From Iphione sp. A-MEVVRFRX5 (taxonomy: Eukaryota): a stretch of DNA of 64,000 nucleotides. The notes beneath the pieces are model-generated. The model ran no database searches and was not told the DNA's origin. It saw only the letters and a program-made list of their open reading frames with translations. Shown piece after piece: positions 38,410 through 64,000 of the stretch (position 1 is its first letter; each line of letters opens with the position of its first letter). The stretch spans positions 39,432,001 through 39,496,000 of the forward strand of contig OZ320314.1 of assembly GCA_976226885.1 (NCBI GenBank), read 5' to 3'. Both the position numbers and the translations under genes were made by a program.

Positions 38410-38621
38410 NNNNNNNNNNNNNNNNNNNNNNNNNNNNNNNNNNNNNNNNNNNNNNNNNNNNNNNNNNNNNNNNNNNNNNNNNNNNNNNNNNNNNNNNNNN
38501 NNNNNNNNNNNNNNNNNNNNNNNNNNNNNNNNNNNNNNNNNNNNNNNNNNNNNNNNNNNNNNNNNNNNNNNNNNNNNNNNNNNNNNNNNNNNNNNNNNNN
38601 NNNNNNNNNNNNNNNNNNNNN
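38410..38621. other. Assembly gap (212 N)
   Basis: Run of N. Confidence 1.
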
Positions 38622-60358: not shown

Positions 60359-60520
60359 GCTTTGACTCGAAGAACTGGCGCGAGGACATGCGGCCGCTCA
60401 GCCCACGAGAGCGGGGAGAGCGGGGCTACCGCGGCAGCCGGAGGGGTCGCGGCCGCGGCCGGGGGAGCGGCCGGGGAGTTGGACGAGGGGGCAGCCGACC
60501 TGACAGCACCACTGAATTCG
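60359..60520 (+). CDS. LARP1: LARP1 RG-repeat exon (GFDSKNWREDMR...RGRGRGRGSGRG...STTEF)
   Basis: RG repeat typical of LARP1 upstream of the La motif. Acceptor cacttcctcag, donor TCG|GTAAGT, phase 1 to 1. Confidence 0.9.
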
Positions 60521-60874: not shown

Positions 60875-61004
60875 GGAGTGGGACGGAGCAGTTCTACATG
60901 GACCCCAGTATGCTTTCTCTCTACGGAGGACAGCTCTTCATCAACAGCTTCCAGCAGTACCAGATGGATGAGAACCTTCTCAAAGAGTACATTCGGAAAC
61001 AAAT
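60875..61004 (+). CDS. LARP1: LARP1 La-motif start exon, variant A (GSGTEQFYMDPS...MDENLLKEYIRKQI)
   Basis: DENLLKEYIRKQI matches helix 1 of the LARP1 La motif (human DQELLKDYIKRQI-EYYF). Acceptor ttcctgttgcag, donor AT|GTGAGT, phase 1 to 2. Confidence 0.9.
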
Positions 61005-61400: not shown

Positions 61401-61423
61401 TGGCAGTTCAGGTAGATGGCAAA
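61401..61423 (+). CDS. LARP1: Candidate LARP1 micro-exon (VAVQVDGK) feeding variant-B exon
   Basis: Branch-point-like CTAAC/CTAAT at 61370-61380 and a pyrimidine tract. AG acceptors at 61400 or 61406, donor AAA|GTAAGA. Converts phase 1 to phase 0, as the exon at 62231 requires. No homology support. Confidence 0.45.
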
Positions 61424-62230
61424 GTAAGAAGCCTAAAGGAATGGGAAGGGAGGGCTCATTGTTTTCCCCGGTTATACGTGTGTTACCGATGATATGCAGT
61501 TGCAATTATATAAGAATGAATTACAAATATGATTTTCATCTCATTAGTCCATTATATATTTGATTATGCTGTTTGCTGCATGAATGGCTTTGATAAAATT
61601 CACCGAGTTTGAGAGTGAGTGGATTTCCCCTTGCATGGTTTCGCCTGTTTGTTGAATATAACGAATGGACAATTTAGGACAACTCACTTCACAATAGTAG
61701 TAATTAAATGAAACTCGAGAGGTTTGTAGCATACGTGTACTAAGTGTGGCCTTTCGCCCGGATTTTGATGAAAGCAGGTCGGCCTGTTATTTTACCAGTG
61801 TAAACCGCTGTCATCCTACTACTGAAAATCTATATCGGGCCTACAGTATTGACTAATCGTTCCCCAAAAAGTAAATGATAAAACATGCTGCAGCGGAAAG
61901 TGAAGCTGTCTCATTGGCATGAAAAGTTACATCTGCGGTATTCAACTAATTATTGCACGCACAAAAAATATTATCGGGTGCGTTAGTTGTACATTCCAAG
62001 ATGAGGTCTGTTTCTTGTATTATAACAGTTTGAAAGCACTGAAATCGTAGTTCTCCCCGATGCCCCGCACTTCGCCATCACAAGTTTGTGATTTTTAAAA
62101 AATAAAAGCATCAAAATGAGTGTATTGTCTTTCGACAATGTGGAAATCTGCTATAAATGGGAAGACCTTTAAAACACACATACCGTCTCTATTCTCTACT
62201 TCTATCCTTCATCTCACATGACCCTCGCAG

Positions 62231-62331
62231 CTTCGACCCATGTCAATGATGTCATATATATACATTAACAGCTACAGTAATCAGTTCATGGTGGAGGAGA
62301 CTTCGCTTATGGAATACGTACGCAAACAGAT
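62231..62331 (+). CDS. LARP1: LARP1 La-motif start exon, variant B (LRPMSMMSYIYINSYSNQFMVEETSLMEYVRKQI)
   Basis: Open frame paralogous to exon 60875-61004 (FINSFQQYQMDENLLKEYIRKQI vs YINSYSNQFMVEETSLMEYVRKQI). Long pyrimidine tract ending ctcgcag, same phase-2 donor AT|GTGAGC. Confidence 0.75.
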
Positions 62332-64000
62332 GTGAGCATAAAACTTTAAACGTTTTCTTTCAAGTCAGTCGTAATTTACACCTTTTCTCCCTGACAATTT
62401 GTGTGGTATAGTGAAGCCGTTGGCTTTTGGGCCGTGTCAGTCAGTTGATACCTGACCTGACAGTAGCACGTTCGTGAGATTACCTTAAAGACGTTTCTTG
62501 TTGAGATACTTTAATACAGTTTTACTTCAAAGAGTCTCCGTAATCCCCCCCCCCCCAAATATCATAGTGAGTAGTTTTATTTGCGCACATATTTCCTCAG
62601 ATCCGTAGCACAAATAGCTGTAGATAATGTTGTAGCTTGGGGGATGTAAGCCTTGCGGAAAAGTCCTGCTACATGACATCACACATGAGTGACTGAGCGC
62701 AAACACGCTCGGTAGTCATGTCTGGGGGTCTTATAGTCCATTCAACCATTGTCAACAGGACATTTTCTGTGTAGCCACTTGCATCTATTCGTGTTATGTA
62801 AATCAAACGTTTGATACCTTCTTTTTTTGACCGTCAGGGTAAAAATTGTGTCGACCGTGAAGCACATATGCCTTTCTCGAGTTTACTAGGAAGATTACAG
62901 TCACATTATGTGACTGAGAAAATAGTTGGGTTCCAAAAGCAGAATCCTGGATATGTAAGGACGACATACTGCTCTGAATTTTATAGTCGTTATTTCTTCG
63001 GAAAGTTTAGATTTAAGCTATCACTGGATATATTATGAAAAAAAACGGGGAGTGTCTTGGGCTCCAAAACTTTTAAAGCGGCGACAAAAATTTACGGTTT
63101 GTTTTTAATGACTGCAAAGCATACATGTGTAATGTATGCATGTAATGTGATGCATTTGTTTGTTAGACAGTGCGTATGACAGGAATTATCGCCGATGCAT
63201 ATTATACACGTTTATTATAATTATTATTGAAGTGATCCTAAAATAGTCATTTGATATGTAAGAGTTTGCGTGTTGCATAGTTTGTCTATTTGTATTGCCA
63301 GTTGTCATCAATGACTTTTCGCAACACAGTTGCTGGGATAACTCTGTCGCTTACCCACACTCGCCAGCACACACAGAGTTAAAGTTTTTTTCCCATGTAT
63401 CACCCTTCTACACCTAGTCATCCACACTTAAACACAAGGCATGCATGTACACGTTCGGTATGACTCGTGTGCATCGAAAAGTGTCTATTGAATGTTTACT
63501 TGTCTTGTTTCATCGATTAGATGAAGTTCTTGGCCCATTTGCCCTCCATTTATTTACTAGCATGTGTTCAATGACGTATCAGTTGTAACTTGGTTCATTA
63601 AGCAAATGCAGATTGCCCGCATTTGCATTTTCATAATTTCACTTGCATATTAAGATCAGCTACACGTTTTCACTGTATGTGTCTAGTCGTATTTAAGCAA
63701 CGATGATAGAGAGTTTTTATTACTCTCTCTGTATATCACTTGTTCAGAAATGAGTGCTCAGAATAGAAATTTACGTGTGAACCTTGCTAGTAGAGTGAAC
63801 CCTTCAGTACTAACTGGAACAAGTGTGGACATGACCATAACTAGGAAGAGATGGTTCCAGTTGATATTCTGATGTTCAAATCAGAAAAAAAATCGAGCTT
63901 TAGTTTTGTTCAGCCTACCCTATAAACACAATAGAATCTCCCGGCTTGAGACTCCCGTATATAAACTATCAGTACAGATTTGTTAGAAATGGCTGCTTCT

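What the first reader, a model, noticed from the sequence alone, without database searches (positions are those of the whole stretch)
62231..62331. Tandem-duplicated LARP1 exon: candidate mutually exclusive splicing of the La-motif N-terminus
Seen: 1.2 kb after the canonical exon 60875-61004 (...GQLFINSFQQYQMDENLLKEYIRKQI) is a second open exon (...SYIYINSYSNQFMVEETSLMEYVRKQI) that the ORF track misses. It has a strong acceptor and the same phase-2 donor position (AT|GTGAG). The nucleotide sequence is strongly diverged while INS, the hydrophobic spacing, EY.RKQI and both splice sites are kept, which suggests purifying selection. Splicing A directly to B (phase 2 into phase 0) would frameshift, so only one can be used productively. 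Established: KQI-EYYF starts La-motif helix 1, and its Gln is one of the conserved RNA 3'-end recognition residues. Inference: two LARP1 isoforms differ in the linker and helix-1 surface of the RNA-binding module. I am not aware of this being described for LARP1.
Basis: partly seen in the sequence, partly recalled or inferred. Interest (0 to 1): 0.85.

Follow-up and report, generated by a model that had tools for sequence, protein, structure and literature searches.

The report
Conserved 60-nt duplicate exon in LARP1
A worm's LARP1 gene carries an old, selectively maintained partial copy of the exon that encodes the start of its RNA-binding La motif. It looks like a 60-base in-frame optional exon used after the original, not a mutually exclusive partner, and no RNA data could be obtained to confirm this.

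Summary
1.2 kb after LARP1 exon A (60875-61004) lies a diverged copy with the same AT|GTGAG donor. Its similarity to A is far above chance.

The copy is also under selection. Two other species (loci L001 and L007) carry it at the same place, between exon A and the La-motif exon. Their introns no longer align with the window and synonymous sites are saturated.

It is a 75-nt block, 62265-62339: TTRACAG, then exactly 60 nt (62272-62331), then GTGAGCAT.
- The 60 nt have no indel in any of the three species.
- Only one sense frame is open in all three.
- dN/dS is about 0.12-0.26.

The conserved acceptor is phase 2, like exon A's donor. A to B' therefore splices in frame (AT+C = Ile) and inserts 20 residues. 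These re-encode the first 12 residues of the La motif, including the Gln equivalent to human Q333.

In L007 the 5' extension is closed by a stop.

Caveats:
- No RNA run was listed, so usage is inferred.
- A stronger-looking outer acceptor in two species would give a premature stop.
- Four more distant relatives lack the copy.

The parts
60359..60520 (+). Upstream LARP1 coding exon (RG-rich), with a phase-1 donor TTCG|gtaagt
   Evidence: Translation and splice context. Aligns to L001 at 77% nt identity and to L007.
60875..61004 (+). Exon A: 130 nt, phase-1 acceptor, phase-2 donor AT|GTGAGT. It encodes ...LLKEYIRKQ(I), the N-terminal residues of the La motif.
   Evidence: Orthologous exons occur in L001, L003, L004, L007, L008 and L010. 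In relatives it lies directly before the EYYFS exon. dN/dS against L001 is about 0.15.
61401..61423 (+).
   Evidence: The frame arithmetic is correct, but it is one of 142 AG..GT stop-free frame-fixing candidates. It has no conservation in the A-B' introns of L001 (score 15 vs shuffles 15.9 +/- 2.2) or L007 (14 vs 16.5 +/- 2.4).
62231..62271 (+). It is not conserved and is out of frame after exon A.
   Evidence: Ungapped identity to L001 is 2/15 at 62227-62241 and 14/30 at 62242-62271, against 10-13/15 inside the block. The equivalent outer-AG exon in L007 starts with an in-frame TGA. After exon A, outer-AG exons hit stops in all three species.
62264..62271 (+). Conserved inner 3' splice site, TTAACAG| (TTGACAG| in L001 and L007). 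It is preceded by a 39-nt zone free of AG.
   Evidence: This is the only AG kept in all three species. The AG-free zones are 39, 32 and 36 nt, each in the top 6-13% of AG-AG gaps of the local introns; product 6e-4.
62272..62331 (+). Exon B': 60 nt, phase-2 acceptor and phase-2 donor. It encodes (I)YSNQFMVEETSLMEYVRKQ(I).
   Evidence: Exactly 60 nt with no indel in the window, L001 (2748-2807) and L007 (12307-12366). Among sense frames only this one is open in all three. Nt identity 67-75%; dN/dS 0.12-0.26 with dS 0.9-1.75; variable columns by codon position 7/5/11.
62332..62339 (+). Conserved 5' splice site GTGAGCAT
   Evidence: Identical 8-mer in all three species. The blastn block ends at 62339.

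Best explanation
B' (62272-62331) is a functional 60-nt protein-coding exon. It arose from an old tandem duplication of exon A. Only the 3' part of the copy survives as a conserved block; upstream of it only faint similarity to exon A remains.

B' is spliced after exon A, not instead of it. Exon A's donor leaves two bases (AT). The conserved inner acceptor TTRACAG| supplies one base (C), so the junction reads Ile and the frame is kept. B' ends with the same AT| and joins the La-motif exon exactly as exon A does.

Inclusion inserts 20 residues. As a result, the first ~12 residues of the folded La motif, up to and including the RNA-contacting Gln, come from B' (..LMEYVRKQ-I-EYYFS) rather than from A (..LKEYIRKQ-I-EYYFS).

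The exon is most likely optional. Exon A's own La-motif residues remain more strongly conserved than those of B', so the A-to-La junction must still be used.

Shown here: the duplication, the conservation, the frame compatibility and the position. Inferred: actual inclusion, its alternative nature, and any effect on RNA binding.
For: 1. Paralogy with exon A is far above chance.
2. The same element lies between exon A and the La exon in L001 and L007, while the flanking introns do not align. blastn finds only exons: the B' block is 79% identical over 75 nt (L001 vs window), 73% over 77 nt (L007 vs window) and 80% over 75 nt (L001 vs L007). That is as good as or better than exon A, at 70-77%.
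3. The block has sharp edges, at TTRACAG| and at GTGAGCAT.
4. It is exactly 60 nt in all three species, and only one sense frame is open in all three. dN/dS is 0.12-0.26 with dS near or above 1. Random placement of the observed substitutions gives as few amino-acid changes without a stop with P = 0.017, 0.045 and 0.07 for the three pairs. The Leu codon is CTT/CTG/CTC.
5. Of three nearby AGs, only the first survives in L007. The 32-39 nt upstream of it are AG-free in all three species.
6. In L007 the B' donor (AT) plus the La-exon acceptor (cag|T GAG TAC TAC) gives Ile-EYYFS.
7. B' keeps L-x-E-[YH]-[IV]-R-x-Q, the residues conserved in A-type exons of all relatives. These align to human LaM residues 323-334, with Q333 critical for binding.
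Against: - No transcript evidence at all. No RNA run was listed, so read laying could not be used. The few spliced fragments found in the protein database all join A-type sequence to the La exon, and none is identifiably from a species that carries B'.
- The inner acceptor has only a moderate pyrimidine tract in the window and L007 (0.56).
- Both of those species have a better-looking outer 3' splice site 38-41 nt upstream (pyrimidine fraction 0.67 and 0.83, with CTCAC/CTAAC branch-like motifs). Used after exon A, it gives a premature stop.
- The coding statistics rest on 19 codons in three related species. An antisense frame in register is also open.
- The La exon of the window species itself was not seen.
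Confidence: 0.5

Rival explanations
1. Poison or decoy exon. The conserved block is a splicing-regulatory copy of exon A's 3' end. Its inclusion, mainly through the outer acceptor (62231 in the window), puts a premature stop into LARP1 mRNA and lowers expression by nonsense-mediated decay, as in many RNA-binding-protein genes. It may coexist with the productive 60-nt form.
For: After exon A, outer-AG exons of 101, 94 and 98 nt run into stops in all three species. The outer 3' splice sites of the window and L007 look stronger than the inner one. The intronic bases beyond GTGAG are conserved.
Against: The outer AG is not positionally conserved, and in L001 it has a poor tract (pyrimidine fraction 0.39). 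The conserved block shows a coding-type substitution pattern and keeps the La-motif residues and an open frame. Conservation stops at the inner AG, not the outer one.
Confidence: 0.15
2. Constitutive exon. In this lineage B' is always included, so LARP1 simply carries a 20-residue tandem repeat before the La motif and there is no isoform switch.
For: The same frame, length and conservation evidence as for the best explanation. Nothing measured here bears on inclusion level.
Against: Exon A's last 8 residues (LKE[YF]IRKQ) vary at 1 position among the three B'-bearing species, against 3 positions in B'. That fits exon A still forming the La-motif start in many transcripts. The exon is short, a multiple of 3, has a weak acceptor and has conserved intronic flanks; these are typical of optional exons (my own knowledge, not tested here).
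Confidence: 0.12
3. Exon B (62231-62331) is mutually exclusive with exon A and is reached from 60520 through the 23-nt micro-exon 61401-61423.
For: In the window the arithmetic works: the frame is open from 62222, the acceptor at 62231 is good, and the micro-exon has a GTAAGA donor. In L001 a 94-nt phase-1 form (start 2714) could formally replace exon A.
Against: The micro-exon is not conserved in L001 or L007, and 142 such candidates exist by chance. The 5' extension is not conserved. In L007 it starts with an in-frame TGA. The required acceptor phase differs between species. The pair fails the length and reading-frame preconditions for mutually exclusive exons.
Confidence: 0.07
4. Alternative first coding exon. 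A promoter in the A-B intron drives a transcript that starts translation in B, giving a LARP1 that lacks the N-terminal region.
For: In-frame ATGs lie upstream of the block in the window (62240, 62246, 62249) and in L001 (2722, in the same register as 62246). A Met inside B' (LME) is conserved in all three species where A-type exons mostly have Lys.
Against: L007 has no in-frame ATG between the upstream TGA and the block. The 12 codons before the internal Met show coding-type conservation, which a 5' UTR would not need. No promoter-like block is conserved.
Confidence: 0.05
5. Functionless relic of an exon duplication, never spliced in.
For: No RNA evidence. Four more distant relatives do without it.
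Against: It would have to stay 67-80% identical, indel-free and stop-free in three species whose introns are unalignable and whose synonymous sites are saturated.
Confidence: 0.04

Closest known systems
Mutually exclusive exon pairs made by tandem exon duplication (criteria of Pillmann et al. 2011, PMC3228551; survey in PMC5740500)
   Same: Two adjacent homologous exon copies in one intron neighbourhood. They share the donor phase and encode the same structural piece of the protein (the start of the La motif).
   Different: The conserved copy is 60 nt against 130 nt, a difference that is not a multiple of 3. The acceptor phase is 2 against 1. Using both copies keeps the frame, and using B' without A breaks it. 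The logic is therefore 'A alone or A plus B'', not 'A or B'.
Conserved in-frame cassette (skipped) exons
   Same: Short, a multiple of 3, AG/GT bounded, open frame, conserved across species together with a few flanking intronic bases.
   Different: It is a paralogue of the end of the preceding exon. Inclusion therefore creates a 20-residue near-repeat and swaps which copy abuts the domain. Inclusion was not observed.
Human LARP1 La motif (LaM 323-410; PDB 7SOO and related; Kozlov et al. 2022, PMC9458460)
   Same: The last 11 residues of A or B' plus the junction Ile correspond to LaM residues 323-334 (QELLKDYIKRQI). The final Gln corresponds to Q333, which with Y336 and F348 is most critical for poly(A) 3'-end binding. 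Q is kept in every A and B' copy.
   Different: Known human isoforms differ at the far N-terminus (1019 vs 1096 aa; PMC12645190), not at the LaM start. No duplicate exon at this position is mentioned in that review.
Poison exons of RNA-binding-protein genes
   Same: A conserved intronic exon-like element in an RNA-binding-protein gene. One of its possible acceptors gives a premature stop.
   Different: With the conserved acceptor there is no stop, and the substitution pattern looks coding.

Membership tests
Mutually exclusive exon pair | About the same length, differing only by multiples of 3 (PMC3228551) | tested here: not met
The differences of 70 and 29 nt are not multiples of 3.
Mutually exclusive exon pair | Same reading frame (split-codon pattern) at both exon ends | tested here: not met
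   The donor phase is the same (2). The acceptor is phase 1 for A, phase 2 for the conserved B' and phase 0 for the 62231 form.
Mutually exclusive exon pair | Sequence homology between the exons | tested here: met
   Score 58 against shuffles 21 +/- 4; best non-self match in the window.
Mutually exclusive exon pair | Exactly one of the two appears in each mature transcript | not testable with these tools
   No RNA run was listed. No transcript fragment identifiably from a B'-carrying species was found.
In-frame cassette exon | Length a multiple of 3, with phases compatible with both neighbours | tested here: met
   60 nt in three species. A (AT) + C gives Ile. B' (AT) + T of the La exon gives Ile in L007.
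In-frame cassette exon | Open frame and purifying selection across species | tested here: met
   Only one sense frame is open in all three. dN/dS 0.12-0.26. Introns unalignable.
In-frame cassette exon | Both inclusion and skipping seen in RNA | not testable with these tools
   none listed.
LARP1 gene | The exon is followed by a La motif of the LARP1 type | tested here: met
   The La exon is outside the window. In L007, L003, L004, L008 and L010 the orthologous exon A is followed by EYYFS...FHRVQALT. The L003 La exon matches the human LARP1 LaM (7SOO) at E = 1e-18, better than other LARPs. The ORF-call proteins retrieved with the L007 La exon carry PF05383.
LARP1 gene | C-terminal DM15 region | not tested
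   It lies outside the window and the fetched loci.
Poison exon | Inclusion introduces a premature stop | tested here: inconclusive
   Yes with the outer AG in all three species; no with the conserved inner AG. Which AG is used is unknown.

The most novel reading that the evidence does not exclude
A lineage-specific regulated switch in which one optional 60-nt exon replaces the first helix segment of the LARP1 La motif, including the context of the poly(A)-binding Gln (Lys to Met at the position of human K327 in all three species). A competing upstream acceptor turns the same exon into a stop-containing, expression-lowering form. One element would then tune both the RNA-binding surface and the dose of LARP1.
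Probability: 0.2. Interest if true: 0.5.

Novelty: new member of a known kind. Interest (0 to 1): 0.35.

Why it matters
LARP1 is a central regulator of ribosomal-protein mRNA translation and poly(A)-tail protection. Its La motif binds the RNA 3' end through a few residues, one of which (the Gln before IEYYF) is encoded at the very end of the duplicated exon.

A naturally selected second version of this segment gives a ready-made pair of La-motif variants to compare for RNA affinity and specificity. It is also a clear example of a duplicated exon that was shortened to a multiple of three and became an in-frame add-on rather than a mutually exclusive partner.

This is a lineage-restricted isoform feature, not a new mechanism.

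Tried and rejected
- RNA evidence. The look-up of sequencing runs on exon B listed no RNA run, so read laying could not be used.
- Profile search of A+B against 1.84 billion representatives. It found only short ORF calls on genomic contigs, no annotated full-length LARP1 and no B-type protein. P0004 and P0006 are unrelated repeats.
- The search for homologous proteins with exon-A ORFs. It gave one new hit on a contig too short to use.
- The search for homologous proteins with the N-terminal exon. This gave L007, which was the useful one.
- The search for homologous proteins with the La exon of L007. Of the 120 listed hits (179 found), most are genomic ORF calls. A handful are spliced fragments, all joining an A-type exon end to the La exon, and none is from a species known to carry B'.
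- Metagenome scan. It found only a distant A-type exon (L006).
No conservation.
- Direct A/B exclusivity in the window. No AG gives a phase-1 acceptor in B's open frame.
- Upstream-ATG start. It fails in L007.
- Internal donors inside exon A that would make a clean swap (CA|GTAC, GA|GTAC). Seen by reading the sequence; they are absent in L001, so I regard them as chance.
- TTRAC as a branch point for a downstream AG. The downstream AGs are lost in L007.
- Antisense coding. One antisense frame is open in all three, but the variability pattern would then peak at codon position 1.
- Exon A peptide against the PDB. No direct hit. The mapping to the human LaM was made through the La exon alignment and the chain's preceding residues.
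- Structure prediction of spliced A/B' La-motif constructs.

Full report
**What is in the window**

- An RG-rich exon ends at 60520 with a phase-1 donor.
- Exon A is 60875-61004 (130 nt). It ends ...LLKEYIRKQ plus the two bases AT before GTGAGT.
- A second stop-free piece, 62222-62332, ends ...SLMEYVRKQ plus AT before GTGAGC.
- The La-motif exon (EYYFS...) is not in the window.

The A/B peptide similarity scores 58. Shuffles give 21 +/- 4.2 (maximum 43 of 2000). It is the best non-self match among 2169 stop-free pieces of the window.

**No RNA data**

Earlier notes on this genome call it annelid-like and also report that no RNA data could be obtained. I did not test the taxon.

**Relatives**

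A profile of A+B against 1.84 billion representatives returned only short ORF calls on genomic contigs of relatives. Fetching those contigs and others gave these loci:
- L001: 3.3 kb Logan contig.
- L003, L004/L005, L008: long ENA contigs.
- L007: from a 790-kb ENA contig, found through the N-terminal exon.
- L006, L009, L010: short or distant contigs.

Scanning them shows a B-like element in L001 (about 480 nt after exon A) and in L007 (643 nt after exon A and 2570 nt before the La exon).

It is absent where the whole A-to-La intron is covered and short:
- L003: 85 nt.
- L010: about 210 nt.
- L008: about 540 nt.

It is also absent in the 10-kb intron of L004. The element is therefore shared by the three closest species in the sample and missing in the four more distant ones.

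**What exactly is conserved**

Between the window, L001 and L007, blastn aligns only exons; the introns are unalignable.

| Comparison | B block identity | Exon A identity |
|---|---|---|
| L001 vs window | 79% over 75 nt | 77% |
| L007 vs window | 73% over 77 nt | 76% |
| L001 vs L007 | 80% over 75 nt | 70% |

The B block in the window is 62265-62339. In an ungapped register, identity to L001 is 1-2 of 15 upstream of 62242, 7 of 15 in the two bins before 62272, 10-13 of 15 through 62346, and then background.

The three sequences share TTRACAG, then 60 nt, then GTGAGCAT.
- There is no indel.
- Of the three sense frames, only the one paralogous to exon A is open in all three species.
- Of three nearby AGs in the window (62270-71, 62276-77, 62283-84), only the first survives in L007.

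**Selection**

- Window vs L001: exon A has dN 0.185 with dS above 1 (saturated under NG86; 1.26 under LWL85). B' has dN 0.205 and dS 1.70.
- The other B' pairs give dN/dS of 0.20 and 0.26.
- Differences by codon position are 3/3/9 for window vs L001. Variable columns in the three-way alignment are 7/5/11, against 6/5/14 for the last 60 nt of exon A.
- Random placement of the observed substitutions gives as few amino-acid changes without a stop with P = 0.017, 0.045 and 0.07. The three pairs are not independent.
- The Leu codon is CTT/CTG/CTC, and Asn and Gln show synonymous changes.
- B' keeps L-x-E-[YH]-[IV]-R-x-Q, the positions conserved in A-type exons of all relatives.

These tests rest on only 19 codons. 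Together with the indel-free conservation they make a coding exon the best reading.

**Frame logic**

- Exon A's donor is phase 2. The conserved inner acceptor is also phase 2, so A to B' reads AT+C = Ile and stays in frame.
- B' ends in AT like exon A. In L007 it meets the La exon acceptor (cag|T GAG TAC TAC) to give Ile-EYYFS.
- Skipping A and joining 60520 (phase 1) to B' breaks the frame. The isoforms allowed are therefore A-La and A-B'-La.
- The 32-39 nt upstream of the inner AG are free of AG in all three species. Each zone is in the top 6-13% of local AG-AG gaps, with a product of 6e-4. This fits a used 3' splice site.

- The 62231 acceptor gives a 101-nt exon that needs a phase-0 partner.
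- The proposed 23-nt micro-exon fits arithmetically. So do 141 other AG..GT stop-free candidates. It is not conserved in L001 or L007.
- The 5' extension is not conserved. The equivalent outer-AG exon in L007 begins with an in-frame TGA.
- The outer-AG exons are 101, 94 and 98 nt long, so their phases disagree.
- By the published preconditions for mutually exclusive exons, the pair fails on length and on acceptor phase.

**Caveat: the outer acceptor**

In the window and in L007 the outer AG sits behind a better pyrimidine tract (0.67 and 0.83, against 0.56 for the inner AG) and a branch-like CTCAC or CTAAC motif. If used after exon A, it leads to a stop in all three species.

A stop-containing, expression-lowering form may therefore coexist with the productive one, or even dominate. 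L001 has the opposite arrangement: a good tract before the inner AG (0.72) and a poor one before the outer AG (0.39). Only RNA data can settle which AG is used.

**Other readings**

- Start codon in B. In-frame ATGs lie upstream in the window and L001 but not in L007. The codons before the conserved internal Met look coding.
- Constitutive inclusion. This cannot be excluded. However, exon A's last eight residues vary at one position among the three carriers, against three positions in B'. This suggests that exon A still often forms the start of the La motif.
- Antisense coding. An antisense frame in register is open, but its variability would peak at codon position 1.

**Meaning for the protein**

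The La exon of a relative aligns to the human LARP1 LaM (7SOO) with EYYFS at chain residue 24. The chain's preceding residues are ..QELLKDYIKRQI.

The crystallised LaM is residues 323-410 with an 11-residue tag. Q333, Y336 and F348 are the residues most critical for poly(A) 3'-end binding. So the last 11 residues of A or B' plus the junction Ile correspond to LaM 323-334, and the final Gln corresponds to Q333.

With B' included, this segment comes from B'. All three B' copies have Met where A-type exons mostly have Lys (the position of human K327), and Asn or Ser two residues earlier. Whether this changes RNA binding is untested.

A recent review of LARP1 lists only N-terminal isoforms and no exon duplication at this site. 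Paper searches found no description of it.

**Verdict**

The feature is real and conserved. It is a new member of a known kind: an alternative exon born from tandem exon duplication. It is of moderate interest, and its use is unproven.

Noticed in passing
L009:623-842: In another relative, the 3' splice site and the first ~15 nt of the La-motif exon (tgctttcag|TGAGTACTACTTCTC) are tandemly repeated about 3 times (period 64-73 nt) just upstream of the real La exon. This is a second, independent local duplication at the same exon junction of LARP1.
   Followed up: partly
window 62186-62230 and L007:12240-12268: Textbook-looking 3' splice sites (branch-like CTCAC/CTAAC, a long pyrimidine tract, CAG) lie 38-41 nt upstream of the conserved inner acceptor in two of the three species. 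After exon A they would give a premature stop.
   Followed up: partly
L001:2714-2807: In L001 only, an AG at 2712-13 would give a 94-nt phase-1 exon that could formally replace exon A in frame (a true mutually exclusive form). Its pyrimidine tract is poor, and the form is not possible in the window or L007.
   Followed up: yes
window 38410-38621: A run of 212 N (assembly gap or masked stretch).
   Followed up: no
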